From the IMG/VR virus record IMGVR_UViG_3300009034_000001, positions 124,001 to 188,000 of that record: 64,000 bases of DNA; one strand, 5' to 3'. This document shows, in pieces, positions 19,527 through 42,680 of the stretch (the first letter of the stretch is position 1; each line of letters begins with the position of its first letter). The notes under the pieces are model-generated. The model worked only from the letters and a program-made list of their open reading frames with translations, had not been told where the DNA came from and made no database searches. The position numbers were made by a program, and so were the translations under genes.

Positions 19527-20576
19527 TCACCTCATTTGAACAAATTTGTGTATCTGAGTACCAAGGATGACGTCCTTACCTTTCCAAAAGTTAGACATCA
19601 AAATATCCGCAACGTTACTCAATCGTTTAAGGTATTCATTAACATCAAACGGGACCGGAGACACTGGAGACAAAACAAAGGCTGCGGTTGACATTTTTTC
19701 TACTACATACTTTGCAAACTCTAGATCTTCAATGCCGTCCAGAAGTAACTTGAACTGAACGAAAGGCCGAGGATGTTGTGGATCAAAGAAATGCTGTCTT
19801 TGGTCTAGCCAGAAACGTTTGTAAATCTTCATGGGAACGTCCAAATTGTTTTTAACCTTTGAACTCGGTCCTTTTATATCTACGGAAATCAAGCCATTCA
19901 CCAAGTCAAACACCTCAGGGTTCCAAATTGTGCCATTGGTTTGTAGCATTATTTGGCAACCAAATCGACGTAACATATTTATCAAATACTTAGCGGCTGA
20001 AGGTTGATGTAGCACCTCACCGCCAGTAAGGAAAATCACACTATTTCTTAACGGACTATATTCATCATGTGCGTTAACACAATGAACTTCATCAAGTAAC
20101 CGACGAATCGACCAATTCTGACCTTTTCCCCAACTATACTTTGTGTCGCAATATGGACACTGGAGGTTACACCCCGAAAATCTAATAAATGTAGCAGGGG
20201 TTCCCACCTCATGTCCTTCGCCACAAACGGACCGGAACACATCTTCAGCAAGCCTTACTGGAACCGTTCTTTCAAACCAAGCTTGTGGCAAATCATTCAA
20301 ATCTTCTTCATACAAACCTAAATACTCTATCTTATGAGAACGGTAACTGTTTACCGCGTCAACAAAATATTTAAAGTATCCAGGAATGTCAAATCCGCCA
20401 AAATATTCAATAAAAAGTTGTGGGTGTTTAATATAACAATCCGGACTGATTATACCATCAGGTTGTGGATAGCAATTCTCAAAATCCAAACCCAAATCGT
20501 GGAAAAAGTAAATAATCTTGTCAATTTGATTAGCAAACATATCTTGGAATTTTATTTCGATCTTTTTTCCAGTCAT
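19527..20576 (-). CDS. queE: QueE 7-carboxy-7-deazaguanine synthase (radical SAM) with ~100-aa N-terminal PD-(D/E)XK-like domain
   Basis: FRSVCGEG..GTPATFIRFSGCNLQCPYCDT, TGGE, QTNG, QIHK. Confidence 0.85.
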   Translation of the reverse strand: MTGKKIEIKFQDMFANQIDKIIYFFHDLGLDFENCYPQPDGIISPDCYIKHPQLFIEYFGGFDIPGYFKYFVDAVNSYRSHKIEYLGLYEEDLNDLPQAWFERTVPVRLAEDVFRSVCGEGHEVGTPATFIRFSGCNLQCPYCDTKYSWGKGQNWSIRRLLDEVHCVNAHDEYSPLRNSVIFLTGGEVLHQPSAAKYLINMLRRFGCQIMLQTNGTIWNPEVFDLVNGLISVDIKGPSSKVKNNLDVPMKIYKRFWLDQRQHFFDPQHPRPFVQFKLLLDGIEDLEFAKYVVEKMSTAAFVLSPVSPVPFDVNEYLKRLSNVADILMSNFWKGKDVILGTQIHKFVQMR

Positions 20577-21588
20577 AATATTTCTCCCAATTAAAACTTA
20601 ATGTGCGTAATGTAATTTACGGCAACCCATTTAACAGCTGTGTACACCCCAAGAACAAAAAATGCCAACAAGGAAAGACTCATCAAAAACGACTTGAAAT
20701 TAACATCTCGAGGTTCAATTTCGGTATGACCACATTTTTTACAAGTTTGAACTGGCTCAGAATGTAATTGCAAACATTTTACACACTCATAAATTTTCAT
20801 TTATTAACCTCCCCAAGACTTCTTTTTTTTGAAATGTGGACACTGTGAGCATGTAAAGGAAACAAAGCTGGTTTCCAATGCAACCCAACTCAAACATAAA
20901 TTATAATGCTTACAATCCAAATATCGATGATTACGAACATCTGGAACCGCCAAAGCGTCAAATAACTCAGTGGGCTTACAGCCAAACTTCTTTAATTCAT
21001 GAAAGATAGACTTCATTTCTCCGGCATCGATCTTACTACTTACGCTTAGTATAATCCTTCGGAGATCGTAAGCAATTATCCTAAATACTGTAAACACCGA
21101 ATACCGACCATGAAATCTACGAGGATGTTCACCATTAAGAAACCGTTTCACAAAATCTTCACGTTCCGGAACAGAAACAACAGATTTATCAATACGCCTA
21201 TTCACGTGTCCCTCTACTGTGGCACTACTCTCTTCAGTATGATTCTGAATTTCCGACATAGACACACCTCCTACGAGAAGTGAGTTATCACAATTTTTAT
21301 TATTTTTTGTAGTTGAGTTGACATAAATAATATTAGTGTATCTTTTTACGTGCCTTCATGGTCCATTCAACTAAATTAATCCAAGTTTCCACTCGCTCAT
21401 TGTAGCACATCTCCTTACCAGCGATGGCTTTCCAGTAGAGGCTATAAAGTGAGTTTAGACAATCCGGACAAAACCAATGTTTTGCAGTAAAGTCAAAAAT
21501 TAAGCCGCCTTCACTCCAATCGGCACAACAAACTTCACAAATTGTCCTATTTGGATTTAACATATAAAATCCTCACACACTTATTAGG

Positions 21589-22170
21589 TTAAAGTAAATC
21601 AAATTTGTTAATATACCTATACCATTTATTCCGAGGTGTTATTGGATACAATAACGACGTTCGTCTATCCCGTTTGCCAACTGGAAGCAAATACGTAGGC
21701 ACAATAACATTCAGAGTCAAACTTTTATCTTGTAAAATAAAAATGGTAATGTTACTGTCATACCGCGCGACATACGGACAAAATTTGTAACCTCTAGGAT
21801 CTAATTGTACCTTTGAAGCCAAAAGTCTTACAATTTTATCATTAACACGAATGTAGCTACCACGCGAGACTCTCGTAACCACAAATCCTTTCCTTTTTAG
21901 AAGTTGTGTAAATTCCTCCTTTGCACGTGAAAACCAACACTTGCCCCACGAGAAAGTCTTACACCTATTTACTACTCTTTCGCGTTTCTGACTTAAACCT
22001 AACTTATCAATAACTTGTCGAGCGTACTCCCTTGTAAAACCAAAGTATCTACCAATATCTGCCTTAGAACACAGTGGATCGTGATACATCCGCATAAACT
22101 GTTGCATAGCGCCGGGACCATAAAGTTCCTCAAATTTATCCTTAAAAGTTTGGCTCCTTCGCCTTCGCAT
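21589..22170 (-). CDS. HTH-containing basic DNA-binding protein
   Basis: KADIGRYFGFTREYARQ resembles a sigma region 4 type HTH. Confidence 0.45.
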   Translation of the reverse strand: MRRRRSQTFKDKFEELYGPGAMQQFMRMYHDPLCSKADIGRYFGFTREYARQVIDKLGLSQKRERVVNRCKTFSWGKCWFSRAKEEFTQLLKRKGFVVTRVSRGSYIRVNDKIVRLLASKVQLDPRGYKFCPYVARYDSNITIFILQDKSLTLNVIVPTYLLPVGKRDRRTSLLYPITPRNKWYRYINKFDLL

Positions 22171-23227
22171 TGTACGCCTCCTTCAGTTCGTTCAAACTAA
22201 TTACCCCCTTTTTATACGCTTCCCACTTTAGCCAGAAGAAGTAGGTGTAACACACATGATCTCGCAACTCCTCCGATCCAAATTCAAACATGTCATCCTT
22301 AAGGAAATGTGCTGAATCAAACTTTCTCAAACCAGCTCGCAGTCCATCAATACAAAAGTTCATAAATTCCTTAAACCTTTTCTCATCAAAAGAGTTCAAG
22401 CCTTCGTATTTACTATCCCTATCAAACAAGCTAACCAACTGTGCAAATGGAATACGAAGAAGGTTAGGTCTATTCTTGAAAACCCAGATAAGTCCTGGCA
22501 TGTACCGCATTTGAACACAATATTCAGGGAAAAGTGGACTTTCCCGTGGATCTTTATCATAAGTCGTTTTATCTTCCCCAAGCGCAGACAACATTGCAAC
22601 GTTGCGCTCAACACATAAATAACATTGGCCACAATGTAACTTATATGGAATACTTCTACCCTTTATTGTACCTCTATCATAGTAAAAACAGCTGTTCGTT
22701 TCATATATCAAATCGCCAACTTGGTCATGACACAGTTTAACACGATCACACTTTATGGTTGCATTTCCAATGTCATCCAACGTCCAAAGTTTGCACTGAG
22801 GATCTTTCCCATGAATGTAGTTCTGTAACTCTTCAGTATTGCTGTCTTTTGTTGACACCGACCACCAATTTACCCAAGTTTCTGGCCCACCACCTTTATA
22901 CTCGCCCATTCCAATGTCAGCACCCGGGAACCGTTCCAATGTCCAATCAATCATATACTGATTCCTTTTAGGTAGCATATCTCGCGTCATCATGTATTTC
23001 CGATCTGAAAAAATAAGCGGTTTCGGAATATCAAAACCTTCCTTAGTGCACTTATTCCATAAGTTCATAACGGTTCGAACTTCGCGTACACAATAGCCTT
23101 CACCTTTCCACCTAACGTATATTGGCTGTGGTTTAATTAATCCAAGAGTCTGATTGCAACGAGCAAGCCAAGTCAACACGGCCAGTGAATCCAATCCGCC
23201 TGAAAATAGCACAATAGCTTTTTTCAA
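22142..23227 (-). CDS. queC: QueC-like PP-loop ATPase (7-cyano-7-deazaguanine synthase family) with C-terminal extension
   Basis: KKAIVLFSGGLDS, PKRN, TNSCF, HCGQCYLCVER zinc site. Confidence 0.75.
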   Translation of the reverse strand: MKKAIVLFSGGLDSLAVLTWLARCNQTLGLIKPQPIYVRWKGEGYCVREVRTVMNLWNKCTKEGFDIPKPLIFSDRKYMMTRDMLPKRNQYMIDWTLERFPGADIGMGEYKGGGPETWVNWWSVSTKDSNTEELQNYIHGKDPQCKLWTLDDIGNATIKCDRVKLCHDQVGDLIYETNSCFYYDRGTIKGRSIPYKLHCGQCYLCVERNVAMLSALGEDKTTYDKDPRESPLFPEYCVQMRYMPGLIWVFKNRPNLLRIPFAQLVSLFDRDSKYEGLNSFDEKRFKEFMNFCIDGLRAGLRKFDSAHFLKDDMFEFGSEELRDHVCYTYFFWLKWEAYKKGVISLNELKEAYNAKAKEPNF

Positions 23228-25531
23228 TTCACTTCCCCCTCATTTTTAAGAATTTCCTCAAGGTTATCTTTCTCTTGAGGCCAATGTTCTAAAATTTTAA
23301 TATGTGCTCGATATGCAAAACCGAACGTCTGTTTGCCGTTGACAGGATCATTTAACGTAAAATCGCCGCGTTCTGAAACATTTAATACTAACCTGATAGC
23401 ACCCGCCTTCTGGGAAGTCGATAACCCTTTCACAATTTGAATGTACATTCCATGTTGCAAATCCGGAAGAGCAAATTTGGACTCTTCAGCAACAGTTTTT
23501 GTTATGTTATCCTGTAGTTGTTGTTCCAATTTATCAAACTTATCAAGGAGAACCGCACAACAGGTCCGGTCGTCGGTAAATGCTTTTCCAAGTTTAAATT
23601 GTTCCAATGGCAAATCAACCATAATTTGCAGAAAACTATGAAATGCATCATCTGTAGAAACATTTTTATGAATACGGAACTCTTTAATCCACAGGTTAAG
23701 CTGAAAACTAGTCGCAATTTTCCTAAGGAATGACAATTCTGGATACCCAATTTCAAGTAGCATGATAATTTTCTCCTCGTATTAAAGCTTCGTTAATCCA
23801 GCTTGTGACTACTTTGTTTGATTGGCCTCTCCCGGTAAACAATACCAAATCTCGATATATCGAATTTGACCGGTGAAGTAGACGGGCTTAATTAAAATTA
23901 CTACGTGCGACTTAATAAAAGCATTTGCATCGCGTGTGAGATTATTTACATCGCCGCATACTGGAATCGATGTGTTCCGAGAAAAAATCTTTATGCCGAC
24001 TTTTGGACATTTTCCCGCACTTAACACACTACTTTCCAATGGAACCTTATCAGAACAAGCAGAGGTATGACCTTCATAATATCCAAACACTAATCCCACT
24101 ACTAAACAGAAAACAGCAATTGTGTTTTTCACGTACTATCACCTCCTAATATCACGGGCGAGGATCTTTTTTTGATGCCAATTTGTAACGTCTTTCAAAA
24201 TCGTTACATATTGGACTGTCAACTAACGGATTTAGCCAAAATTCTCCTGTCATTACCAACTCAACATCTTCCGGTCTGTAGCACATAATATGTTCTGGAA
24301 GACAACAGTAACGTGCATTACGAGGATCAATGTTGTTGACCTGGCAATAATACTTAAACTGCTTATACGTGCCTGTAAGAACTAAGACCACCTTCTTCAT
24401 ATTATTTCGTCTCCTTGATTACCTTTCGAAGCCTCTTTTCGAGAATGTTAAACATCTGCGGTAAAACTTGTTTAACATTTGATACAGAATGGGTAACTGT
24501 AGATAAGTCACAGTAGAAGCAATACTTCATTACAACTCCATTTTCTTCAATAGTGTCAGCAATAGGAACATTAGCCGAGCCACAAAAGGCACAATCCCCA
24601 AGTTCTTCAGTCATGATATCTCGACCTCCTTAACAACCGACGTCACTGACGTCCGTTTGTTGTTCTTCAACTTCAAGTTGTTCTTCAACAGCGTGTATTC
24701 CTACACATTCCGAAGGTAAATCTAATGTAGTTATTCTGTGGTAAGCATCACTCTTTGAATTAATTCCATCTTTCCGACATCTTATCTGACCCTGACCTAA
24801 CTCACATTCCCAACCGTCATTCATCAATTTACCAACCGAGTCAGCAACATGTTCAAGTCGTCGCTTTAACTCTTCGCCAAGCTCTTTAAGAGCCTCACAG
24901 AAAACAATTGGCTTTGCGTTTTGTTCTTTATAATTATTCCACCATTTATCAAGTTCTGCGCCTGCCGTCCTAAACAAATACAAACTAACGTAAATCATCT
25001 CAATCTCCTTACTTTTTAATCTTTACTCGTTTATTCATCCCTCCCTTCTTGCTAGATCTGTTTCAACACACTCCATTAGTAATTCAAGCTCATCTCGTAA
25101 CCCTTTTAACATATCAAATGTTGTCTCCAATGGGACAGAGGTATCTGTATGTACTTCATTAATGGCTTTAATTGCTTTCTTATATGCTATGGAATCTATC
25201 ATTATCTACCTCCTTACCGTCTTCTTTTCAATATAATTCTACCTGTTTTACAATTCTTGCACTTAAACTTTAACTTATAAGCACATTTCCTACAGTAGGC
25301 CGAATCGTTAGAAATATAGCAACTGTAGTAGTCATATTTCAAATAGACTCGTTTCCCAGCTTTTGTCAATTTAGAAACTGTGCTTGGTGCAACCTTTCTT
25401 CTTATACGAGCGTTATTACACCCCCACTCTTCTTCATGTTGAATGTTGTGTCCTAATCCACTCCACCAAGCTAAAGCTTTTCTACAGTTACAACAAAGAA
25501 CATCATGTGTTGAAACCATAACATCCCCCTT

Positions 25532-26404
25532 TTACATAATCCTAGACGCCTTACTACTCCAACTCGTATACAAGTGTCCATCTGGTAAATGTATAACGCT
25601 CTTGAAGCCATCTTTGTACTCATTTACAACACATGTTGCAACGGTAACTTGCAATCCACTGTTGAAAACGTCATAGACCACTTCGCCCCAAGGTAGCCAA
25701 ATAATACTTCTGGCCTTCTTGTGTAAAACTAACCATTCTAAAGCATCTCTAGCAACTTGAATATCAACAAAGTTGTCTCGACTCCATTGAGTTACCGAGT
25801 TCTCTTTCGAATTTTCAGGTATCCACAATTCCCTAAAGACAATTGAATCCACTCCAAGTGAAATTGCACGCTTAATATAGTTGATTATTGTTGTTTCATT
25901 ATAAACGCCTTGTTTATTCATCACGCACGAAAGTCGGACAGTTACATCCGCTTTCTCTTTTAAAAACTTAAACAATTGTGTATAATCTAGATGAATTCCC
26001 ATCAATTCATAATTGAGTTCAAAATCTAACGAAGCAACTGTTATTGTAACGTTTGTTAAGCCATACCTCGGCTTTATAAGCCATTCCAAAAATTCATCCT
26101 GTCTATCCAGAACCAAAGACATGTTGCTATGTAAATCTCGTTGCCCGAATCCAACTAAGGAACACTCGAGTAAAATATTACTCAAATAAACCCAATCAAC
26201 TCCCAAGAGAGTTTCGCCTTTACTAGTGAGAATTGCGGTTTGTGCATTGCCAGCCCTTGCCCACATCAACGAGTTTCGTAACTTAGCAAAGTCTAAGTCG
26301 TTCCTACCAGACTTTGGAGTCTGTGACATCGCGGAAATGCAATATTTACACTTGGCATTACACCCTTGAACTGCAGGAACAATGGAAATGGATTGAACAT
26401 CCAT
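25532..26404 (-). CDS. radical SAM protein, function unknown
   Basis: CNAKCKYC motif, KGETLL. Confidence 0.8.
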   Translation of the reverse strand: MDVQSISIVPAVQGCNAKCKYCISAMSQTPKSGRNDLDFAKLRNSLMWARAGNAQTAILTSKGETLLGVDWVYLSNILLECSLVGFGQRDLHSNMSLVLDRQDEFLEWLIKPRYGLTNVTITVASLDFELNYELMGIHLDYTQLFKFLKEKADVTVRLSCVMNKQGVYNETTIINYIKRAISLGVDSIVFRELWIPENSKENSVTQWSRDNFVDIQVARDALEWLVLHKKARSIIWLPWGEVVYDVFNSGLQVTVATCVVNEYKDGFKSVIHLPDGHLYTSWSSKASRIM

Positions 26405-27078: not shown

Positions 27079-28293
27079 CTATATAACCCTTTTAAGCCTT
27101 ATTGTGTTAAAGTTATACTTCCTTCCCTTCTTGGCACAATTAATCCACATTCCAAGTGACCTTTGAACAATATCCGCGGTAAAGTCAAACTTGCCATCAA
27201 ACATAGACGAGCCAACACCATAAGCATAAACCGGCAAATCTAACCTTTCAAATTTGGAAATCTTCTCCGGCGTAAATCCGCCACTAACTACAATCTTAAT
27301 ATCACTAAAGAATTGACGTCCTACGCTCCCTACCTTAAAGTCCAAAGACCTGTTTCGTAATGCTAAAAAAACATTTTTTACCAATTGTGGGTTGACTCCA
27401 GTTATTTCATGTAAATTATGCGGCACAAATGTACCTTCATCATCTATAGAATCCAACACCGACTTATCCACCATCGTTCCAGATGTATCTAGTCTTACAC
27501 CAAACAGTTTGTATCGTGGATCTCTTGTTTCCTGATATTTTAACCACATTGCATTTGCAACATCCAAAGATGTCTTTACGGAATCGTTGTCAAAATCAAC
27601 AAGCACAACTCTCTTTACCATTGGATCAATAAATTGACAAAACTTAAGTGTAGCCGTTACTGTATCTCCGCCATAGGCAGCAATTAATCCATGAGGCATC
27701 GTTCCAATGCCTTTTTCTCCCCACCACCAACCTTGGGCGTCAGTCGACACGCCTCCGCATAATGGCAGACCAGCAGCTTCTCTGCCAACAGAATAAGAGT
27801 ACCCATCTTTAGGCTGTACAGTATAACTATCAAATCTGGCAGGAAAGAAAAGAATTGGTTTACCCTTCGCAGCTTTCACGCACCTATAAACATTAGTTGC
27901 AACCTTAGTACCTCTCGCTAAAGTGCCCAAGTATACAGTCTCAAGATGTGCAAACAGTGAATAATCGCCCTCAATTAACATTACCGTTTCCCAAGCGTTT
28001 ATAATATCGCCATCACGTAAAGACCTAATCGTAAGCTTTTCAAAACTTGTGTTTAAAATTTGTTTCATTATATGAATTGACTCATCAATGCCACACAAGC
28101 ATGCGTTATTATTCTTCTGGAAAATCTGAATCCTGACAATGGGACGATGATGATCCCACTCCAAAATTCGTTTGGTATTGTTGAAGTATTCGTCGGTGTA
28201 GCTTCCAAACTTTATCACAGGTTCAACTTTTACACGATTACAATTTAATTTCATATTCCTTACCCTTTTTATCTGGTTTGTAGGTTGTCTCAC
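27079..28293 (-). CDS. nicotinate (or nicotinamide) phosphoribosyltransferase family
   Basis: YTDEYF, GTMPHG, LVDFDND, GVRLDTSG, VSGGF, YGVGS. Confidence 0.85.
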   Translation of the reverse strand: MRQPTNQIKRVRNMKLNCNRVKVEPVIKFGSYTDEYFNNTKRILEWDHHRPIVRIQIFQKNNNACLCGIDESIHIMKQILNTSFEKLTIRSLRDGDIINAWETVMLIEGDYSLFAHLETVYLGTLARGTKVATNVYRCVKAAKGKPILFFPARFDSYTVQPKDGYSYSVGREAAGLPLCGGVSTDAQGWWWGEKGIGTMPHGLIAAYGGDTVTATLKFCQFIDPMVKRVVLVDFDNDSVKTSLDVANAMWLKYQETRDPRYKLFGVRLDTSGTMVDKSVLDSIDDEGTFVPHNLHEITGVNPQLVKNVFLALRNRSLDFKVGSVGRQFFSDIKIVVSGGFTPEKISKFERLDLPVYAYGVGSSMFDGKFDFTADIVQRSLGMWINCAKKGRKYNFNTIRLKRVI

Positions 28294-31484: not shown

Positions 31485-32399
31485 CTAAACGCCTAAATCA
31501 ATCTTGTAAGAATCCACTGTCTTTTGTAGACCATCTTTAAACGGGCTTGGTAAATACCCAAGAATATTCTTTGAATTTGTAATATCAAAACTGACATCTC
31601 TAATGTCACCAAGCCTTTGTTGAACATGTCGAGCTTCCATAGATGCGCCGGTAATTTGTTTTAAATAACTAAAGAGTTCATTTACAGTATGTGACCGGCC
31701 ACTTCCAATGGGAAAGGATTTGCCACAAACAAGTTGCTTTGGTACAAAAGCAGCTAACACGTTTGCAGTAACAACATCTTCAACATAAACAAAGTCCCTA
31801 GTTTGTTCTCCATCACCATAAATTTCAACTGGCTCGCCAGTTAAAAGCGCCCTAGTAAATTTCGGCACTACGGCAGCATATTCTAAATGTGGATTCTGCC
31901 TTGGTCCAAACACATTTGAATAACGCAGTGAAACGGTTTCCAGGCCATACAATTCATAGAAAAGTCTCAAATAATGTTCGCAAGTCAGTTTTGTTACTCC
32001 ATATGGCGACGCAGGCTTAAAGTTGTTGTTGGCACCGTAAACCGAGCCCGAGGATGCAAAAATAAAACGTTTCACGTCAAATTCTCGAGATGCTATCAAC
32101 ATATTCAAAGTGCCCAATACGTTATTTGCATGACTTTCTATTGGATTATCGACGGAACGTTTTACAGAACCAATTGCAGCAAGATGTAACACAAAGTCCA
32201 TTCCATAGCACATAAAACGACAGGCCTCAAGGTCTTTAATGTCGCCACGCCAAAACCGAGCTTTCGAATTTACATTTTCAATTTTTCCATTGGATAGATT
32301 ATCCAAAACGGCAACAAGTTGGCTATTATCGCACAAATAGTCCACAAGGTGTGAGCCAATAAAGCCCGCTCCACCAGTCACTAGCCACTTATATTTCAT
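31485..32399 (-). CDS. NAD-dependent NDP-sugar epimerase/dehydratase (extended SDR)
   Basis: TGGAGFIGSH, HLAA, ASSGSVYG, YGVTK, NVFGPRQ, GDGEQTRDFVYV. Confidence 0.92.
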   Translation of the reverse strand: MKYKWLVTGGAGFIGSHLVDYLCDNSQLVAVLDNLSNGKIENVNSKARFWRGDIKDLEACRFMCYGMDFVLHLAAIGSVKRSVDNPIESHANNVLGTLNMLIASREFDVKRFIFASSGSVYGANNNFKPASPYGVTKLTCEHYLRLFYELYGLETVSLRYSNVFGPRQNPHLEYAAVVPKFTRALLTGEPVEIYGDGEQTRDFVYVEDVVTANVLAAFVPKQLVCGKSFPIGSGRSHTVNELFSYLKQITGASMEARHVQQRLGDIRDVSFDITNSKNILGYLPSPFKDGLQKTVDSYKIDLGV

Positions 32400-33813: not shown

Positions 33814-34374
33814 TACAACATCCTCCTTCAATTGAATGAATATAAACCTACAATAAAATGACTATCCGCGTATCAAGCCAACAATCTCGCCTAATATATG
33901 GTCAACCGAAGCAGTATCCAAAGCTCCAAGTTTCCTCCACTTGTTTATAACCATCTTAAATCTGTAACTACAATCGTAAACCACTTCAGCAAGTTCAATT
34001 TTCGCCCTTTTTAACTCTTGAAGTTCCTTTTCGTCTTCAGGCTCGTATAACGCGAAGCAATTGCTATCTTTTGCGTACTTTATATACTCGCGTTTTCTCA
34101 TGTTACCCTCCAATTTTTTTTCAAACTTTATTATATAATACCTTTGCCAGAGTTAGCAAATTCCTAAGACCTTGCCAAATTGTTAATTTCTGTTCAAAAT
34201 ATTTACACTCGCCGTGAATGTTTTCTAACTTGTGGCTAAGGCCTCTACGTTCGCGTGTGTAACGATTTGTTATTATCACTTTTGAACATGTTTCTATCCC
34301 AAATATCCCCATTAAATATACCTTGAAAAATTTACACTCTTCACAATATACTTTTTCCATCTCCTTCACCTCGA

Positions 34375-35307
34375 TCAAAATGCATAATTTACTATGCTGC
34401 CTTTAGAAACCTTCTTTATATTCAAACGTTTCTTACTTCCAAAAATCACCCAATCATCAAAGCCAACAAAAGGTTTGTAAATATAGCCAACATAAGTGTA
34501 GTACTGTTTTAATACCTTAACAGTATCACCCAACGTGCGACTTCCCGTGCCTAAACCGGTTATAACATATGGAACGGTAAAATGACAAAAGTAAACAAGC
34601 TCCCTGAACTTAGCTAATTCATTCCCTTCATGCCAATCGTCAGGTTGACAAAAGAACACATCGTTATATAGTAACGCTTCCAGAACGTCATAACGTTTAT
34701 GAAAAACTTTATAACGTTTCTCCGGCATAACCGTTGGCATACCAAGATAGACAAGTTGTATAACATCTGGATTCAAAACATTTTGTAAAAACATATTTGC
34801 ATCGCCAAATCGGAAGTCAACCTGGTTAGGCTTAATCCTTGAAGTCATCCTCTCTAAATACTTCTGATTCTTCTTCACAAGTTCATTTACCGGAACTTGT
34901 AAGTCATGAACATAAATATGTTCCAACCATGCCATAATCTGTGCAGCACGAGAAAAACTTTGTGGCTGTTTCTTAAATATATAGTCAGCAATGGCCTTTA
35001 CAGTCTTCATTCTATCGCAGCATATCACATTGAGACCTTTTCTAGCACATCCATAAGGTAAGTCCAACCCACACGCAAAAGGTATAACAACTTGTTCAAC
35101 ATCAGGTGGGATATTTTCAACAATTTCATCTAAGATTAACCGTTGGGAACCCAAGATGCGAGTATCAAATATAATATCACGATCGAACTCCGGCTTATTC
35201 TTTACAGTTAATTCAAGCCTTTCATAGTTATCCGACTCTAATGATCTCACAAATTGTTTTAATCTGTCAATCCAAAGTTGATTCGCTTTATTTCTTGGTT
35301 TCTTCAT
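34375..35307 (-). CDS. D12-class DNA methyltransferase-like protein with altered motifs
   Basis: LGSQRLIL..I, IPFACG, NVICCD, DAN, LVYLGMP where DPPY is expected. Confidence 0.55.
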   Translation of the reverse strand: MKKPRNKANQLWIDRLKQFVRSLESDNYERLELTVKNKPEFDRDIIFDTRILGSQRLILDEIVENIPPDVEQVVIPFACGLDLPYGCARKGLNVICCDRMKTVKAIADYIFKKQPQSFSRAAQIMAWLEHIYVHDLQVPVNELVKKNQKYLERMTSRIKPNQVDFRFGDANMFLQNVLNPDVIQLVYLGMPTVMPEKRYKVFHKRYDVLEALLYNDVFFCQPDDWHEGNELAKFRELVYFCHFTVPYVITGLGTGSRTLGDTVKVLKQYYTYVGYIYKPFVGFDDWVIFGSKKRLNIKKVSKGSIVNYAF

Positions 35308-36086
35308 CGTACATACACCTCACTAGCAAAGGCACGTAACTTCATACAATTGTTCCAAATCTGGAGTAACACTTTCGGACCAACCTTGATCGAAAAGTCG
35401 AGATCAAATGGACTTGGTTTTTCAAAAGTGCCAAACTGACTAATTTCCTTACCGGCTAACGCAAGTTTGGTTGGATCTCCAGTATCAAGACGTAAGTACA
35501 AACCAGCGTGTCGATATCCCATTAATTCCAATCCACCATCTGAAGGCATACCTAGTAAATGAATAACCTTGTTTATTGTTAATTTACTTAACAGGTAACT
35601 TAAAAACCTCAAACGATTTATGCCAGGATGAGTTGAAAACAACGCGGGCAATAAACCTCTATAGCCAAACCCGATCGAGTAAATCTCAGGGTGTTGATTA
35701 AACCAATTAAAACTTTGAACTAGAGATTCAAGTTCCAAACCTTGAACAACGCCCATGAACTTTATATCTGGACCAAAGGCATCACGAAATAATTTTATTG
35801 AACGATCGGCTGTGCGAATTGTCTTCTGTGCATCCTTCCAAATGTCAGGCAATACTACTTCATTAGGCTGTGTCAACTCAATCTTTTCGCACATCTTTTC
35901 AGCTTCCATTGCAACGCCGCACTCAACCGCGCCGTTATCCAAAACTTTCCACTTTGAATTCTGTGAGTAGAACTTGGTATAAGCATTACTTGGTTCTACT
36001 AAGTGTGCCAGTAACAAATGAAAATCTTGCAAACTGTCAAAGTCGTCCAAATATGCAGTTGGCACACAAAAACTAAACTCTATCAT
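35304..36086 (-). CDS. TGT-fold protein, candidate DNA 7-deazaguanine transglycosylase (DpdA-like)
   Basis: VLDNGA, VLPD, GVVQG, IGFG, HLLG, LDTG occur in TGT barrel order. Confidence 0.65.
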   Translation of the reverse strand: MIEFSFCVPTAYLDDFDSLQDFHLLLAHLVEPSNAYTKFYSQNSKWKVLDNGAVECGVAMEAEKMCEKIELTQPNEVVLPDIWKDAQKTIRTADRSIKLFRDAFGPDIKFMGVVQGLELESLVQSFNWFNQHPEIYSIGFGYRGLLPALFSTHPGINRLRFLSYLLSKLTINKVIHLLGMPSDGGLELMGYRHAGLYLRLDTGDPTKLALAGKEISQFGTFEKPSPFDLDFSIKVGPKVLLQIWNNCMKLRAFASEVYVR

Positions 36087-37229: not shown

Positions 37230-37533
37230 GTTTCCCTCCTAACCTTTCTTTGACCCTCTTGTCGAAGTTGTTGATTCGATCATCAACCTCTTTCAATTGA
37301 TCTTGAAGATATAATATTTCTTCTTCTTTACTTTCGATTTCACTTGTGGTCTTAGCTACTTTTTTCAAGTCTTCGGTAATAGCCAATTTGTGTTCCAAGC
37401 GTTGTTTCTCATGTTTCTGGTTAAGCTTGCCGATTAAATACCAAAACACAATAAGAAGTCCCACAAGAAAAGGTATGAACTTGTAACCTTTCTTAATGGT
37501 ACTTTTAATTATGTTCCACAAACTTTTCAACAT
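37174..37533 (-). CDS. i-spanin-like protein
   Basis: N-terminal TM plus coiled coil, downstream of holin and endolysin. Confidence 0.5.
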   Translation of the reverse strand: MLKSLWNIIKSTIKKGYKFIPFLVGLLIVFWYLIGKLNQKHEKQRLEHKLAITEDLKKVAKTTSEIESKEEEILYLQDQLKEVDDRINNFDKRVKERLGGKHDSKDAKESIDSLNDSWD

Positions 37534-37564
37534 AACACCTCCTGACGTTATTCCTGAACTGCGG

Positions 37565-37864
37565 TTACACCTTTATTCGTCCGCCACCTAACTGTTTTAT
37601 CTTTTTTGCAACGTGCACGCCACTACTCGTTAACCAAGTACGTACAGTTGCTGTTTTAAAGACTTCACGCATTCCGTAAATAACGCCATAATTAGCCACA
37701 TTAAAGGTTGTCCAATTACCTCCCGAGATGTGACTATGTGTAACCAACCACGTTGAAACCCAAAGGCCACTTATGATGCCCCAAGTTTTCAAACTGATTA
37801 CATTTTCAACAATCTTGTATAAAGCAGCTTTCCAAAATGATTCTTCCACTTTCTTTTCTGCCAT
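37565..37864 (-). CDS. putative holin
   Basis: Small, two hydrophobic segments, basic C-terminus, next to endolysin. Confidence 0.45.
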   Translation of the reverse strand: MAEKKVEESFWKAALYKIVENVISLKTWGIISGLWVSTWLVTHSHISGGNWTTFNVANYGVIYGMREVFKTATVRTWLTSSGVHVAKKIKQLGGGRIKV

Positions 37865-37959
37865 TGTTACCCCCTTTACTTCGTTATATCATCTTAATAG
37901 TTAGTCCAATTACTAAGGAAAATTACAGTTAAAAACACATCTCTTATGTTAAGAAATAT

Positions 37960-38475
37960 TTAAACTCTATTCAACCAGCCTTTTAAATACTTTGTAAGCT
38001 CTGGCCTACGTTCAGATAGCTTGATATATCTGACAACTTCCTCACAACGATATATCTTAAGTAAGGCTTTAGACCAACCATCCTCAATAAGCAAATTCAA
38101 ATTGTACAATGTTTTAGGGCCAATATCTCCATCCAGCATCAAATACGCTGGTTCCCCAAGTACCATAGTAAGTTTATTTACTGTACGTTGTAAGGTAACG
38201 GATGCTGTCTTTACGCCTACGTTCACAGCATAATCCAAAATTTCTGTTGCTAAATCCTGATCCTCAATGTAAACACCTTTTATTGGACACCAGTAATCGC
38301 AGTCATAAATTTCAGTTGCTTCATCCTTGGTTAAACTTTTAATGTCAACAGCTGGATGTGCACGTTTAGAGATTCCATATTTTGTTTCTCCACCCGGATC
38401 GTCGGGATCATTTACATATCCGCCTTCATGTTCAAAGATTACAGGCATTGCTTTCTCTAGTCTGGCCATAAACAT
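37960..38475 (-). CDS. endolysin, glycoside hydrolase family 108
   Basis: HEGGYVNDPDDPGGETKYGIS, DGDIGPKT, GWLNRV. Confidence 0.92.
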   Translation of the reverse strand: MFMARLEKAMPVIFEHEGGYVNDPDDPGGETKYGISKRAHPAVDIKSLTKDEATEIYDCDYWCPIKGVYIEDQDLATEILDYAVNVGVKTASVTLQRTVNKLTMVLGEPAYLMLDGDIGPKTLYNLNLLIEDGWSKALLKIYRCEEVVRYIKLSERRPELTKYLKGWLNRV

Positions 38476-39135
38476 TTACCTCCTGAAGTCTTTGTGTTTC
38501 AACTTAGTTACTATACGTTTACCCGACCGAGCTTTTAATTCAACCAATGGCTTCAACACAAGTCCCTCAGCAAGAAAGTCGCCAAAGCTCGATTTAAGTC
38601 CACGTTTAACAGTCATTATAGCATCATCAATAGTTCCTATGCTAAGGATTTGGACAATATCAATTCCAAGCTTCGTTGCAATATCTACCATATTTCCCCT
38701 TTCAAGCCACCAATCATTAATTAATATGTCAAATAGTATGAAACTCTGTCCATCGCGTATGTAATTGCCCCCTTTCTGAATTCCGGCGCCATAACCTTCG
38801 CCATACAAAGTCACGTCCTGCATTCCAAACATTTTCTTAAACTTTTCAACAGGGAACATTTTATTAAGTACCTCTAGCAATAGTGGGGGCATATTCGCAT
38901 TATCGGTTTTTCCTCTAAACGAAACTTTATCCGCATCGTTAATTTCAATCCCGTTGTTTGCAACGGTTCTGTAAATTACCCTGATGTTCATTCCGTCAAT
39001 TTTCTCGGTCCCAACCCAGAAGTTATCCTTCAAGTATTGAAATTCAGGCCGAGTCCAATCACCTTCGATGAAGTAATTTGGTTTCTGTGACATATCGCGT
39101 TTGAAGATACTTTGAATTTTAGGATACTCCTTCAC
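38476..39135 (-). CDS. RNA ligase (Rnl2-like adenylation domain)
   Basis: TEKIDGMN, YGEGYG, FILFDI, AEGLVLKP, TKLK. Confidence 0.85.
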   Translation of the reverse strand: MKEYPKIQSIFKRDMSQKPNYFIEGDWTRPEFQYLKDNFWVGTEKIDGMNIRVIYRTVANNGIEINDADKVSFRGKTDNANMPPLLLEVLNKMFPVEKFKKMFGMQDVTLYGEGYGAGIQKGGNYIRDGQSFILFDILINDWWLERGNMVDIATKLGIDIVQILSIGTIDDAIMTVKRGLKSSFGDFLAEGLVLKPLVELKARSGKRIVTKLKHKDFRR

Positions 39136-39766
39136 TTGCGTAACCCCCTATATACAAAGTATTATTGTCATTATTACAATTACGCCAACAACCAGGCTCA
39201 TTAAAAGGAAGACCTTATCATCCTGATCAGCTATTTTCTCTTTTTCCAATGCCTCCTCGTATGTAATGTCTCCTTTTTGCCATTTATCCCTAATTTCCTT
39301 TCTCATTTTCTAACTCCCTCATCACTACACGTCAATCTTCTTCAGAATTATCCTCGTCCTCTTCAAGTATTGACTTCTTATACTCTTCAGTACAAATCAC
39401 ACAGCCACGACTGCCATAGTCATGATAATACTCATCAATACTAGTATCAACCTTCTCGCCTTTATTCACCTGCTCTACCGCATGATTAAAGCATAATGAG
39501 CCATACTTCTTTGTTGAAAAGACCACCTCCCACGGACTACTCATACCTTAGCCTCCTCAAATGCTTGCTTAACATCTGTTATGCACTTCCTGACTGACTT
39601 TTCAGCTCTAACCCAAAACTTTAGTTTCTTTTCAAGATATACAAGATCACAATCTTTATCGCAATGTTCATCTTTAATCTGGTCAGTTATCGATACCTGA
39701 GATATCAATATTCGTGTCAATACTTCCTGTAAGTCGTAAAAAATTCCGCCCATAACTATTATCCTC

Positions 39767-40003
39767 CTACACCACGGAAACGTAGCCGTTTGAAAATTTA
39801 ACTGTGCCTCGTTTCTTAGCAAATAGTGTAAAATCTCTTCCAACACCGACGTTGGAACCCAGCTTTATTTTTGTGCCAACTTGTCTCACCAAAATTGTTC
39901 CTACGTTTACAAGTTGGCCATCTCCTCGTCTCACGCCTCTACGCTTTCCCCGCGTATGACACCCTTGATGGGCTCTACTGCCGCCAGCTTTCTTGTGTGC
40001 CAT
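39767..40003 (-). CDS. rpmA: 50S ribosomal protein bL27
   Basis: MAHKKAGGS...KRRGV...[11 protein letters not shown]...[18 protein letters not shown]. Confidence 0.95.
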
Positions 40004-40005
40004 TG

Positions 40006-40527
40006 TTACTCCTGTAACATAAGCGTGTTCTGGCCTAACAATTTAAAATGTTCTGGTTTGAATGTTGCAAAGAAGTCAACTGAACTACACAACCACCAAT
40101 TGGTATCTAAAAGTATGAAAGGTTTGTCCCAAAGTATGTTAGAAAGCCGCTGAGATAATTCAATAAACTCGAACTTCATGCCGATGTAGGGTTTTCGGTT
40201 ATCACGTTTAATCACCAATATTGGTATCCGGTTGGTTTCCCTAGCGTCACGTTCACATTGTGCAGCATATTCAAGGAATCTAACATTTTTGTTATGGTCC
40301 AAAAGTTTTAGTATATCAAATTCTTTCGGCGCTTTCAACTCAATATTAAAATGATCAATTAATGGTAAACCAAGTTTATAGTGAGGATGATTAAGATTAA
40401 CCGTAACGTCCCCTTGGTGGGACTGACCAGGAATGCGTTTAAAGATACCTGTGTATTGTCCATTTGTCCACCAACGACTCAACGACTTTTTCGGCCACTC
40501 TCTTTCAAAACTTTTCCACGATTTCAT
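40006..40527 (-). CDS. PD-(D/E)XK Holliday junction resolvase-like protein
   Basis: [18 protein letters not shown]. Confidence 0.6.
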
Positions 40528-41448
40528 CCTATATCACCTTCTATAACCTTCCGTTCCTCATGAATTACCTGAATGTGTGGCCGCCATTCAAATGGAATTT
40601 CAGCATTAACTTGAGCTTCTGTAGCACCCATAGACTCAAGGAGTGCTACAATCCCAAGGCATTCAATTGGAGTATGTTGTTTGTAATCCTTATTCAAGTT
40701 TCCCAATTTACTTAAAGTGCAATTCGCCCTAAGTAACTTAATAAACTCGTTGTCAAGTTCTATCGTTATCCTAACCTTCCTAGACATAAAGCCTCCTTAA
40801 GAAACATCACCATACTGTTGGATTTACATCACCGTGCTGTTTGATTTTTGTATCTTCATATAGACCGTGGTTTTTACGATATATCTCCAAGATAGCCATT
40901 ATTAACGATCCAACCCCAAGAGCTCTCTCCCAGTATTTCCCGTTAAATGTGTCAAGTAGTCTATAAATCACATAAGTAAATTCACCTGCGGCTTTAGTCT
41001 GATCATCAGGAAGTCTCGAAAGAATTGTGTTTATTGCAACATCATATTCTTCTCTTCGTTCTTGTGGTATATACGGCATTTTTTACCTCCTTCATCTCTC
41101 CATACGGTTTCACCGTAGGATATACATAACTAGCTGCTTGCAACTTTGGACAATTAATACAGCATCTCGACCACGAAAGTGTCCACGGTTTCCCACTAAA
41201 ATCCCAATTATGAAAGCCAACAAAACAAAAGAACCTTCTAAACCGTTCCCATATACTATCAACCAATTTCTTCATATGTAGTTCCTCGTTCGATATAAGT
41301 TGGTATTTCATACACATCTGGAAACTCTTTAAATAACTCAAATTCCAAACGTCTTAAGAACGATTCGCGTTCCACTCTTTCGCTCCAACGTCGCAGGTAA
41401 TGCCCAAGGTAAATTATTGCAAACCACATAGCCATTTTCTATTACTCC

Positions 41449-41670
41449 TTATGTTTTTAAATTTTTTAAAGCTTTTTCAACCTTCTCGATACTCTCCTTA
41501 GTAACAAATTCTTCGTTGCAAATGTCACAACGTTTTACGGTAAAATCAAACACCGTAACATGAAAAAATTCCTTTCCGCGCGTGAATGGCTTCGGAAACT
41601 TAAAAGTTTCACGCGCTTTCACCGTCAAGTGTAAAATGCCCTCGTCACAAACGTAACACTTCTCTTCCAT
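41449..41670 (-). CDS. YgiT/MqsA-type zinc finger protein
   Basis: CYVC...CDICNEEF; likely start MEEKC. Confidence 0.6.
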   Translation of the reverse strand: MEEKCYVCDEGILHLTVKARETFKFPKPFTRGKEFFHVTVFDFTVKRCDICNEEFVTKESIEKVEKALKNLKT

Positions 41671-41891
41671 TAATCTTCCTTTATCAAACCATCCAACAAG
41701 CCCCAGCGTGTCTTCGTCCAACAGCGTTCATACAGCCAATAGAAAAGTGTTTTAGTCACTGCAACACCGGCCGTAATTTCTAATGATGTAAGCCAAGCCC
41801 CGGTAACAGCTTCACAGACAAGAAAAGTTATAACTATTGCGCCAACCCGATAACCAACGGTTTTAACTAATGTTCTTTTATGTGTTTCCAT
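41670..41891 (-). CDS. DUF2061-like small membrane protein
   Basis: METHKRTLVKTVGYR...YWLYERCW..WG. Confidence 0.7.
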   Translation of the reverse strand: METHKRTLVKTVGYRVGAIVITFLVCEAVTGAWLTSLEITAGVAVTKTLFYWLYERCWTKTRWGLLDGLIKED

Positions 41892-42269
41892 TTCGATTTA
41901 TTTAAAAAATAACTTTACCGACTTTAACACGTTTAATTAATTGTTTAATTTCGTCAAGTAGTTCCATCCTTTCACTGCACAAAATCGGAGAGTAATAATT
42001 CCAGTAGTCTGGACTACTATGGTTCATATAATAAACACATCTGTTCAGAATATCTAATAGCTCAGACTTCTTACGCTGTTGTGTAACTTTTTTTACGGCC
42101 TTCCGGATAACACTACGCTTAACAGTGCCCTTACCCGGATGATTTTTAACAATTCGTTTCCTCATGGAGTCACCTCGGAAACCTACTAGATACTTTTAAA
42201 TTAAACTATTTTCATCAATAATTCAACGCTTGACAATTGAATCAGGAAAAGAACATTCTAAGTGCCAAT

Positions 42270-42680
42270 TTAACCAAAAGTAGCCCAATTGGTTGGAGTT
42301 TCGTACACTGTAACCTCCTTAACAATAAGAGACTGTGTATTTAACTGACTTGATAGAATGTTATAGATATATCTCGACATAACTTCTGCTGTTGGCTGAT
42401 CCTCTGGTAATAAAACAACTTCATTGCCAAGATTATATAAATGTCGAAACAGCTCATCATCGGAAGACGATAAAATTGTAGCATGATCAAACTTTTCAAG
42501 GATCTTCTTTAATTCCATTTTCAAAATACCAAAATCAATAACCATTCCCTGATTCAAAGTACCTTTACAAACCGTTGCAATAACCTTATAAGTGTGGCCA
42601 TGAAGATTCTTGCATTTACCGTCGTATTCCGGTAATCGATGTGCAGCGTCAAAAGTCATCTCAATACTAACGCAATACAT
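42270..42680 (-). CDS. queD: QueD 6-carboxy-5,6,7,8-tetrahydropterin synthase
   Basis: FDAAHRL, CKNLHGHTY, MVIDF, FDH, PTAE, VYETP. Confidence 0.93.
   Translation of the reverse strand: MYCVSIEMTFDAAHRLPEYDGKCKNLHGHTYKVIATVCKGTLNQGMVIDFGILKMELKKILEKFDHATILSSSDDELFRHLYNLGNEVVLLPEDQPTAEVMSRYIYNILSSQLNTQSLIVKEVTVYETPTNWATFG

What the first reader, a model, noticed from the sequence alone, without database searches (positions are those of the whole stretch)
19527..42680. Dispersed 7-deazaguanine (preQ0) DNA modification pathway
Seen: queE (19.5 kb), queC-like (22.1 kb), TGT-like (35.3 kb) and queD (42.3 kb) are scattered rather than clustered. No folE, queF or arcS is recognisable in the window. 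Established: FolE-QueD-QueE-QueC make preQ0, which phages use against restriction. Inference: the genome carries dPreQ0 or a derivative. The QueC-like protein is divergent and has ~120 extra C-terminal residues, so its product may differ.
Basis: partly seen in the sequence, partly recalled or inferred. Interest (0 to 1): 0.6.

Follow-up and report, generated by a model that had tools for sequence, protein, structure and literature searches.

The report
Jumbo phage 7-deazaguanine DNA modification genes
An uncultured 241-kb phage from sediment carries a complete, scattered gene set for making a 7-deazaguanine base and swapping it into its DNA, a known anti-restriction trick, here with two lineage-specific accessory proteins of unknown role.

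Summary
QueD is canonical. QueE is a QueE-like radical SAM enzyme with about 105 unexplained extra N-terminal residues. The "TGT-like" protein has no Pfam TGT match. It belongs to the DpdA3 family of phage guanine transglycosylases: its family profile hits the DpdA3 of phages CP220 and immuto_2-6A at about 1e-31, and its fold is TGT/DpdA-like.

The "QueC-like" protein belongs to a divergent, mostly viral QueC branch that keeps the PP-loop and zinc cysteines. Its C-terminal extension is a fused copy of a small helical protein that related phages encode as a separate gene, usually directly upstream of their DpdA3-like gene.

The missing first enzyme exists. FolE2 lies 9.2 kb before the window, and an HGPRT lies 0.4 kb before it. 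QueF, ArcS, Gat and formyltransferase are absent from the genome.

A degenerate Dam-like protein (34375-35307) is translationally coupled to the transglycosylase gene and is syntenic with the QueC-like gene in three related contigs.

Verdict: a 7-deazaguanine DNA modification system of the DpdA3 type. The base is probably dPreQ0 or dADG, but this is unproven. It is a new variant of a known kind and of moderate interest.

The parts
42270..42680 (-). QueD (6-carboxytetrahydropterin synthase), 136 aa, with the CxxxHGH signature. It is not the DpdL paralog.
   Evidence: PF01242 E 1.6e-35. TIGR03367 scores 91.7 bits, above the 89.25 cut-off. The motif is seen. It is the only PTPS-family gene in the genome.
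19527..20261 (-). QueE-like radical SAM domain (residues about 106-349 of the 349-aa ORF), the presumed 7-carboxy-7-deazaguanine synthase.
   Evidence: phrog_2076 'QueE-like' 9.4e-27. The top five NCBIfam hits are QueE models at 5e-22 to 2e-10, all below their cut-offs. The CxxxCxxC motif is present. Homologs sit in Que clusters in L007, L016, L026 and L038.
20262..20576 (-). N-terminal extension of the QueE ORF, about 105 aa, function unknown. The QueE-like proteins of the related contigs are only 211-223 aa.
   Evidence: No Pfam or PHROG match. The related QueE-like proteins are short.
22478..23227 (-). QueC-type core (residues 1 to about 250). It is an ATP-pyrophosphatase with a PP-loop and a Cys4 zinc site, and belongs to a divergent, mostly viral QueC branch.
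   Evidence: Motifs are shown. The exhaustive search found 49 proteins at E <= 0.001; most are proteins of 215-311 aa that match the core. Of 32 aligned members, 31 hit PF06508 weakly. The family profile hits Cap9 at 8e-9, QatC at 8e-8 and QueC 2pg3 at 1e-7 over its full length. Atlas neighbours are viral QueC clusters. A member occupies the QueC slot of a FolE-QueD-QueE-TGT cluster in L007.
22163..22399 (-). Fused small helical domain (residues 277-355 of the QueC-like ORF). In related phages it is a separate gene of 77-140 aa.
   Evidence: Stand-alone homologs were found and aligned as A5. It is a separate gene directly after the QueC-like gene in L005, L008 and L009. It lies directly before a DpdA3-like gene in L005, L008, L061 and L062, and close to FolE2 (one 76-aa gene between) in L060. 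The AF2 model is helical with pLDDT 70, and no known fold or family was found.
35304..36086 (-). DpdA3-family guanine transglycosylase, 260 aa. It has a TIM barrel and lacks the zinc and C-terminal domains of tRNA TGTs.
   Evidence: tblastn gives 24.5% identity over 98% to the immuto_2-6A DpdA. The family profile A1 hits CP220 at 1.6e-31, immuto at 2.3e-32 and D479 at 5e-42. The AF2 model has pLDDT 81. Foldseek top hits are TGT/arcTGT. VIA top three are arcTGT Z 16.5, DpdA 7ui4 Z 16.1 and TGT Z 15.7. D50, N51, E55, H176 and D201 are invariant from the window protein to CP220 and immuto; D81 is invariant within the A1 family only. Family members sit next to FolE2, QueD and QueE in many viral contigs.
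34375..35307 (-). 'X': a 310-aa protein with a Dam-like (D12 methyltransferase) fold and a degenerate catalytic motif. It overlaps the DpdA3-like gene by 4 bases.
   Evidence: Pfam D12 scores only 16.2 bits, below the 22-bit cut-off. Atlas features score 0.93-0.94, and Atlas structure gives TM 0.68-0.71 to D12 methyltransferase clusters. Motif IV reads (G/D)-(T/M)-P-T instead of DPPY, and motif I is not conserved. Homologs lie directly upstream of the QueC-like gene in L005, L008 and L009 at 29-36% identity. The family is rare in IMG/VR.

Best explanation
The phage makes a 7-deazaguanine base from GTP with its own enzymes. The route is FolE2 (just outside the window), then QueD, then the QueE-like radical SAM enzyme to give 7-carboxy-7-deazaguanine. 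The viral QueC-type enzyme then converts this to 7-amido-7-deazaguanine and probably on to preQ0. A DpdA3-family transglycosylase exchanges guanine in the phage's double-stranded DNA for this base after replication, which shields the genome from restriction enzymes.

No QueF, ArcS/Gat or formyltransferase is encoded, so the expected end product is dPreQ0 or dADG. By analogy with the three characterised DpdA3 phages, the replacement may be extensive.

Shown here: the genes, their family assignments, their motifs and their co-occurrence. Inferred: the substrate of each enzyme, DNA as the target, and the identity and level of the modified base.

The encoded HGPRT may recycle the released guanine into GTP (inference). 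The Dam-like protein and the small helical domain are conserved accessory parts whose role is unknown.
For: Pathway enzymes:
- QueD is above its curated cut-off and carries CxxxHGH.
- The QueE-like domain is supported.
- FolE2 has E 1.2e-35.
- The QueC-type core keeps the PP-loop and zinc motif. A family member sits in the QueC slot of a complete cluster in L007, and another sits next to QueD-QueE in L016.

Transglycosylase:
- It is homologous to the DpdA3 of CP220 and immuto_2-6A.
- It has a TGT/DpdA-like fold.
- DpdA3-like genes lie next to FolE2, QueD or QueE in about 10 independent viral contigs.
- DpdA3 phages show complete G replacement by LC-MS (PMC10516641).

Other points:
- Enzymes for later steps are absent from the genome.
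- The phage's three tRNAs (Ala, Pro, Glu) are not queuosine-type tRNAs.
Against: - No chemical or sequencing-signal evidence of a modified base exists. Only assembled metagenome contigs hold this phage.
- The transglycosylase has no significant sequence match to Pfam TGT, and a profile comparison with a PF01702 DpdA was not significant. The TGT structural matches stand only slightly above other TIM barrels.
- DpdA3 activity has never been reconstituted (PMC10516641).
- The QueC-type protein is as close to the protein-conjugating Cap9/QatC as to QueC.
- The QueE and FolE2 scores are below the NCBIfam equivalog cut-offs.
Confidence: 0.75

Rival explanations
1. The system makes a 7-deazaguanine derivative not yet described. 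The QueC-type enzyme, helped by its fused small domain, would couple the activated carboxyl of CDG to something other than ammonia or stop at a different product. Alternatively, the Dam-like protein X would further alter the base once it is in DNA.
For: X, the QueC-like gene, the small gene and the DpdA3-like gene form a conserved block in L005 and L008. The block is nearly intact in L009, at only about 30-36% protein identity. The small domain is fused to QueC in the window and lies next to DpdA3-like elsewhere. The QueC branch is as close to Cap9/QatC, which form amide conjugates, as to QueC. X keeps a methyltransferase fold with an altered catalytic motif.
Against: X lacks a conserved SAM-binding motif I across its four known members. 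The small domain has no recognisable catalytic fold. Neither protein is found near the DpdA3 genes of immuto, CP220, D479 or 37 other viral loci, so neither is needed for DpdA3 function in general. Conserved synteny among related phages may be inherited rather than functional.
Confidence: 0.15
2. The base enters DNA through the nucleotide pool, not by base exchange. A purine phosphoribosyltransferase would turn the 7-deazaguanine base into a nucleotide that the phage polymerase incorporates. The DpdA3-like protein would have another role.
For: A bona fide HGPRT (TIGR01203, 180.9 bits against a 150 cut-off) lies 0.4 kb before the window. Purine PRTase-like genes also sit beside FolE2 in L005, near QueE in L009, and between QueE and FolE in immuto_2-6A. 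Complete replacement of G, as reported for DpdA3 phages, is easier to picture through the nucleotide pool. PMC10516641 (citing its ref. [quoted passage not shown]
Against: The authors of PMC10516641 take the universal presence of DpdA to show post-replicative insertion. HGPRT is equally well explained as salvage of the released guanine. No kinase or reductase specific for such nucleotides was identified here.
Confidence: 0.06
3. The genes are auxiliary metabolic genes that boost host queuosine or preQ0 supply for tRNA, and the transglycosylase acts on tRNA only.
For: Many phages carry que genes. The window also encodes tRNA-related enzymes: a CCA-adding enzyme, an RlaP nucleotidyltransferase and an RNA ligase.
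Against: The transglycosylase is of the DpdA3 type found in DNA-modified phages. It lacks the zinc and C-terminal RNA-binding parts of tRNA TGTs, being 260 aa. There is no QueF to make preQ1, the bacterial tRNA substrate. The phage tRNAs are not Q-type.
Confidence: 0.04

Closest known systems
[quoted passage not shown]
   Same: Both have a DpdA3-type transglycosylase of about 260 aa (24.5% identity over 98%; profile E 2.3e-32). Both have QueD and QueE, a purine PRTase-like gene in the neighbourhood, and genes interspersed with unrelated ones.
   Different: Immuto uses FolE type IA, a canonical QueC, QueF and the DpdN formyltransferase. The window's genome has FolE2 and a divergent fused QueC-type protein, and lacks QueF and the formyltransferase. 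X and the small protein were not found in the immuto regions fetched (about 20 kb, including the DpdA3 neighbourhood).
Campylobacter phage CP220 (dADG, complete G replacement; DpdA3 and QueC*)
   Same: CP220's DpdA3 is hit by the window family's profile at 1.6e-31. It also has a QueC-family enzyme and no QueF. Its pathway genes are dispersed in a large genome.
   Different: CP220's QueC* is no closer to the window's QueC branch than an ordinary QueC is (5.8e-8, 28.7 bits). The CP220 precedent therefore cannot be used to predict ADG here.
DpdA1/DpdA2 phage systems (phage 9g dG+, CAjan dPreQ0, Vibrio phages dPreQ1) and the bacterial DpdABC system
   Same: The logic is the same: preQ0-pathway enzymes plus a TGT-superfamily base-exchange enzyme acting on DNA. 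The solved DpdA 7ui4 is among the top structural matches (Z 16.1).
   Different: Those DpdAs match Pfam TGT, carry the zinc subdomain and modify 0.1-30% of G (PMC10516641). The window's enzyme has no PF01702 match and is much shorter.
Cap9 / QatC (QueC-like enzymes of type IV CBASS and Qat defence systems)
   Same: They share the PP-loop and zinc-motif QueC-like core. The family profile hits Cap9 at 8.4e-9 and QatC at 8.3e-8, as good as its hit to QueC.
   Different: Those enzymes are bacterial defence proteins in other gene contexts. The window's protein and its relatives sit with FolE/FolE2, QueD, QueE and a transglycosylase in phage genomes.

Membership tests
DpdA3 (phage 7-deazaguanine DNA transglycosylase subfamily) | Detectable homology to the DpdA3 proteins of phages with measured modification (CP220, immuto_2-6A) | tested here: met
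   tblastn gives 24.5% identity over 98% to the immuto DpdA. Profile A1 hits CP220 at 1.6e-31 and immuto at 2.3e-32, nearly full length.
DpdA3 (phage 7-deazaguanine DNA transglycosylase subfamily) | TGT-superfamily TIM-barrel fold | tested here: met
   The AF2 model has pLDDT 81 and pTM 0.83. Foldseek top hits are TGT/arcTGT at about 2e-6. The exhaustive VIA search ranks arcTGT at Z 16.5, DpdA 7ui4 at 16.1 and TGT at 15.7. These lead other TIM barrels by only about 1-2 Z units.
DpdA3 (phage 7-deazaguanine DNA transglycosylase subfamily) | Catalytic aspartates equivalent to those of TGT | tested here: inconclusive
   D50 and D201 are invariant from the window protein to CP220 and immuto; D81 is invariant within the A1 family only. 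The register with the TGT motifs (DSGGFQ, VQG) appears in an hhalign alignment that is not significant.
DpdA3 (phage 7-deazaguanine DNA transglycosylase subfamily) | Co-occurrence with 7-deazaguanine synthesis genes | tested here: met
   The own genome has FolE2, QueD, QueE-like and QueC-type genes. Family members lie next to FolE2, QueD or QueE in L013, L016, L017, L019, L020, L022, L024, L026, L030 and L038.
DpdA3 (phage 7-deazaguanine DNA transglycosylase subfamily) | Inserts a 7-deazaguanine base into DNA; modified dG present in virion DNA | not testable with these tools
   Only Logan contigs from sediment metagenomes hold the sequence. There is no isolate.
Pfam TGT (PF01702) | Match above the gathering score | tested here: not met
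   There is no hit in hmmscan or in the six-frame search of the whole genome at E <= 1.
QueC (7-cyano-7-deazaguanine synthase, PF06508) | PP-loop SGGxDS and C-terminal Cys4 zinc motif | tested here: met
   Both are visible in the translation and are invariant or nearly so in the 32-member family alignment.
QueC (7-cyano-7-deazaguanine synthase, PF06508) | Match above the Pfam gathering score | tested here: not met
   The score is 20.8 bits against 22, and only residues 3-25 align. Of 32 relatives, 31 hit PF06508 at E < 0.01, the best at 1e-11.
QueC (7-cyano-7-deazaguanine synthase, PF06508) | Closer to QueC than to paralogous QueC-like enzymes | tested here: inconclusive
   The family profile hits Cap9 at 8.4e-9, QatC at 8.3e-8 and QueC 2pg3 at 1.1e-7. 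Only the QueC hit is full-length. The nearest Atlas clusters are all viral QueC clusters.
QueC (7-cyano-7-deazaguanine synthase, PF06508) | Converts CDG to preQ0 | not testable with these tools
   The only evidence is genomic context. A family member sits between a TGT-family gene and QueD-FolE in L007, and another sits next to QueD-QueE in L016.
QueE (7-carboxy-7-deazaguanine synthase) | Radical SAM CxxxCxxC motif and a best match to QueE models | tested here: met
   The motif is present. The five best NCBIfam hits are QueE models and phrog_2076 scores 9.4e-27. All NCBIfam scores are below the equivalog cut-offs.
QueD (6-carboxytetrahydropterin synthase) | Score above the TIGR03367 cut-off and the CxxxHGH signature that separates QueD from DpdL | tested here: met
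   The score is 91.7 bits against 89.25. The signature is present. The criterion comes from PMC10516641.
FolE2 (GTP cyclohydrolase IB, PF02649) | Match above the Pfam gathering score | tested here: met
   The score is 120 bits against 25, over the full profile. The NCBIfam FolE2 equivalog scores 109.5 bits, below its 215 cut-off. The gene lies outside the window at genome 114001-114804.
D12-class N6-adenine DNA methyltransferase (for protein X, 34375-35307) | Catalytic DPPY-type motif IV and SAM-binding motif I | tested here: not met
   The fold is Dam-like (TM 0.68-0.71). Motif IV reads (G/D)-(T/M)-P-T, motif I is not conserved in L008, and Pfam scores 16.2 bits against 22.

The most novel reading that the evidence does not exclude
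The Dam-like protein X and the small helical protein, which is fused to QueC in this phage, are new working parts of a DpdA3 sub-type. They would either yield a 7-deazaguanine derivative not yet catalogued, or act as the DNA-handling or substrate-channelling factors that let DpdA3 replace G. This could explain why DpdA3 alone has not been reconstituted in E. coli.
Probability: 0.2. Interest if true: 0.7.

Novelty: new variant of a known kind. Interest (0 to 1): 0.45.

Why it matters
7-Deazaguanine DNA modification is an established phage counter-defence. The DpdA3 branch is the one linked to complete replacement of G, yet it has never been reconstituted, and what determines its substrate is unknown.

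This phage lineage offers several concrete handles on those questions:
- a compact conserved block (Dam-like X, viral QueC-type, small helical protein, DpdA3);
- a natural QueC-small-protein fusion;
- FolE2 in place of FolE;
- a recurring purine phosphoribosyltransferase.

These give candidate partners to co-express when trying to reconstitute DpdA3 activity. They also raise a testable idea that released guanine is recycled into the pathway. For genome annotation, the case shows that DpdA3 and this viral QueC branch escape the Pfam TGT and QueC thresholds.

Tried and rejected
- DNA megablast of the QueE-QueC region against GenBank phages found no match.
- tblastn of the QueC-like protein, whole or residues 1-245, against phages found no match even at E 5.
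- The word-index search for protein X found only the protein itself. Homologs came from gene context instead.
- The small domain has no Pfam, PHROG or PDB sequence match and no convincing fold match: Foldseek found nothing, and the best VIA Z was 4.9. One weak row, 2p06 at Z 4.7, recalled from memory as an all-alpha NTP-pyrophosphatase-like protein, is a lead only.
- The complex prediction of the DpdA3-like protein with the small domain gave no verdict (score 0.00). It is not evidence either way.
- hhalign of the DpdA3-like family against a PF01702-positive phage DpdA was not significant.
- The QueE N-terminal extension has no family match.
- The sequencing-run search found only assembled contigs from sediment metagenomes, so no read-level modification signal could be examined.
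- DpdL (CDG decarboxylase) was considered and rejected. The only PTPS-family gene has the QueD cysteine signature.
- Gat-QueC, ArcS, QueF and DpdN routes were considered and rejected because the genes are absent.

Full report
**Setting**

The window is bases 124001-188000 of a 241,415-bp IMG/VR virus record that CheckV rates 98% complete. GC content is about 0.38, and nearly all genes lie on the minus strand. A 173-kb IMG/VR contig carries identical copies of the two genes compared (DpdA3-like and X). Public runs holding the sequence are sediment metagenomes, kept only as contigs. The DNA polymerase is at most about 28% identical to that of any GenBank phage, so there is no cultured near relative.

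**The four reported genes**

All four are intact minus-strand ORFs at the stated coordinates.

- QueD (42270-42680). It is unambiguous: PF01242 E 1.6e-35, and TIGR03367 scores 91.7 bits against a cut-off of 89.25. It has the CxxxHGH signature that separates QueD from the decarboxylase paralog DpdL (criterion from PMC10516641). It is the only PTPS-family gene in the genome.
- QueE (19527-20576). This ORF encodes 349 aa. Residues about 112-346 are QueE-like (phrog_2076 9.4e-27). The five best NCBIfam hits are all QueE models but fall far below their cut-offs. The CxxxCxxC motif is present. The first 105 or so residues match nothing, and the QueE-like proteins of the related contigs are only 211-223 aa.

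**The "TGT-like" gene (35304-36086, 260 aa)**

[quoted passage not shown] PMC10516641 assigns that protein to the DpdA3 subfamily.

A profile built from 13 family members (A1) hits the corresponding ORFs as follows:

| Phage | E-value |
|---|---|
| CP220 | 1.6e-31 |
| immuto_2-6A | 2.3e-32 |
| Vibrio phage D479 | 5e-42 |

The AF2 model (pLDDT 81) is a TIM barrel. Its best matches in two independent structure searches are arcTGT, the DNA preQ0 insertase DpdA (7ui4) and bacterial TGT, with VIA Z scores of 16.5, 16.1 and 15.7. Their margin over other TIM barrels is small.

D50, N51, E55, H176 and D201 are invariant from the window protein to CP220 and immuto. D81 is invariant within the A1 family only. 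Their equivalence to the TGT catalytic residues is suggested by motif register only, because the profile comparison with a PF01702-type DpdA was not significant.

In IMG/VR, members of this family lie within 10 kb of FolE2, QueD or QueE in about ten independent contigs.

**The "QueC-like" gene (22142-23227, 361 aa)**

The protein has the PP-loop and the C...CxxCxxC zinc motif. It scores below the Pfam QueC threshold (20.8 against 22) and has no tblastn match in GenBank phages. The exhaustive profile-free search found 49 proteins. They fall into two groups.

- Proteins of about 215-311 aa cover residues 1 to about 245. Of the 32 aligned, 31 hit PF06508 weakly. Their profile matches Cap9 (8.4e-9), QatC (8.3e-8) and QueC 2pg3 (1.1e-7, full length) about equally. 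The nearest Atlas clusters are viral QueC clusters, including one of 353 aa aligned over residues 1-355.
- Proteins of about 77-140 aa (plus the C-terminus of one 266-aa protein) cover residues 277-355.

Gene context supports a role in 7-deazaguanine synthesis. In a 145-kb contig (L007), a family member sits between a PF01702 TGT-family gene and QueD-FolE, with a QueE-like gene nearby. In L016, one sits next to QueD-QueE. CP220's QueC*, the proposed ADG synthase, is no closer to this branch than ordinary QueC is. The product, preQ0 or ADG, therefore cannot be predicted from homology.

**The C-terminal extension is a gene fusion**

In three related contigs (L005, L008, L009), the sequence homologous to residues 277-355 is a separate gene directly after the QueC-like gene. 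In L005, L008, L061 and L062, that small gene lies directly before a DpdA3-like gene. In L060, it lies close to FolE2, with one 76-aa gene between.

The identical 361-aa product was called on three contigs, which argues against an assembly artefact. The domain is helical (AF2 pLDDT 70) and has no recognisable family or fold. A complex prediction with the DpdA3-like protein gave no verdict.

**A further conserved partner**

The 310-aa ORF at 34375-35307 overlaps the DpdA3-like gene by four bases. Its homologs (29-36% identity) lie directly upstream of the QueC-like gene in L005, L008 and L009. Together these genes form a block: X, QueC-like, small gene, DpdA3-like. The window has split this block into two pairs 12 kb apart.

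Atlas feature and structure searches place X with D12-class (Dam-like) DNA methyltransferases, at TM 0.68-0.71. However, motif IV reads (G/D)-(T/M)-P-T instead of DPPY, and motif I is not conserved. An ordinary adenine methyltransferase activity is therefore unlikely.

X is rare. IMG/VR holds it only in this phage and in the contigs of L005 and L009. Neither X nor the small protein is found near the DpdA3 genes of immuto, CP220, D479 or 37 other viral loci.

**The rest of the pathway**

- Present just outside the window:
  - FolE2 (PF02649, 120 bits) lies at genome 114001-114804, 9.2 kb before the window.
  - A bona fide HGPRT (TIGR01203, 180.9 bits against 150) lies at genome 123047-123568.
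- Absent from the genome: FolE type IA, QueF, DUF5591/ArcS, class-II amidotransferase and formyltransferase.
- Purine PRTase-like genes also accompany FolE2 in L005, QueE in L009, and QueE/FolE in immuto_2-6A.
- The genome's only tRNAs are Ala(UGC), Pro(UGG) and Glu(UUC). None is a queuosine substrate.

**Interpretation**

The most likely reading (about 0.75) is a phage 7-deazaguanine DNA modification system of the DpdA3 type. GTP is converted by FolE2, QueD and QueE to CDG. The viral QueC-type enzyme makes ADG and probably preQ0. DpdA3 then exchanges guanine in phage DNA for this base.

With no downstream enzymes encoded, dPreQ0 or dADG is expected. The characterised DpdA3 phages replace all G (PMC10516641), so replacement may be extensive here too.

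HGPRT may recycle the released guanine towards GTP (inference).

Rival readings are:
- a new derivative involving X or the small domain (about 0.15);
- a nucleotide-pool route through the PRTase (about 0.06);
- a tRNA-only or auxiliary-metabolism role (about 0.04).

Nothing chemical was or could be measured.

**Novelty**

The kind of system is known. Three things are new:
- the lineage-specific block, with a degenerate Dam-like protein and a small helical protein, the latter fused to QueC in this phage;
- the use of FolE2;
- the recurrent purine PRTase.

I rate it a new variant of a known kind, of moderate interest.

Noticed in passing
window 20262-20576 (-), residues 1 to about 105 of the QueE ORF: The QueE ORF has an in-frame N-terminal extension of about 105 aa, whereas the QueE-like proteins of the related contigs are only 211-223 aa. 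By eye it contains a PD...(I)E(Y)-like pattern reminiscent of small PD-(D/E)xK nucleases, but no Pfam or PHROG family matches.
   Followed up: partly
genome 123047-123568 (-), 0.4 kb before window base 1; L005 7121-7564; L009 1461-1892; L001 5843-6238: A bona fide HGPRT is encoded just outside the window. Purine PRTase-like genes recur beside FolE2/QueE/FolE in related contigs and in phage immuto_2-6A. The enzyme may salvage guanine released by base exchange, or it may make 7-deazaguanine nucleotides.
   Followed up: partly
window 17607-19438 (-) and 38476-39135 (-): There is a tRNA or RNA repair set: a CCA-adding enzyme with an HD domain (17607-18635), an RlaP-family nucleotidyltransferase (18635-19438) and an RNA ligase (38476-39135).
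   Followed up: no
window 25532-26404 (-): A second, weak radical SAM-like protein of 290 aa (PF04055 24.2 bits, below the cut-off). It has no PHROG match and no clear NCBIfam family.
   Followed up: partly
window 27079-28293 (-) and 31485-32399 (-): A 404-aa protein has a quinolinate/nicotinamide PRTase N-terminal domain, and a 304-aa protein is an NAD-dependent nucleotide-sugar epimerase/dehydratase (PF01370 2.5e-59). Both look like auxiliary metabolic genes interspersed with the pathway genes.
   Followed up: no
L009 10001-11848 and 13510-17097: In the related 90-kb contig, the QueC-like gene carries an intein with a LAGLIDADG domain inserted at the zinc-motif region. The UDG-fused family A DNA polymerase also carries an intein.
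   Followed up: no
genome 113220-113987 (-), next to FolE2: A phosphoheptose isomerase-like SIS protein (GmhA/DiaA-like, 8e-51, below the cut-off) lies directly downstream of FolE2, and a dUTPase lies downstream of that. dUTPase and PolA also follow the modification block in L005 and L009.
   Followed up: no
window 766-842 (-) and 45637-45714 (-); genome 189584-189660 (-): The whole genome has three tRNA genes: Ala-UGC, Pro-UGG and Glu-UUC.
   Followed up: yes
window 37960-38475 (-) and 40006-40527 (-): A GH108 endolysin with a peptidoglycan-binding domain, and a phage PDDEXK endonuclease.
   Followed up: no
L007 9504-9998: The 164-aa gene directly upstream of the QueC-like gene in the 145-kb contig gives a weak hit (3e-05) to the X family profile. 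A shorter relative of X may therefore accompany the QueC branch more widely.
   Followed up: no
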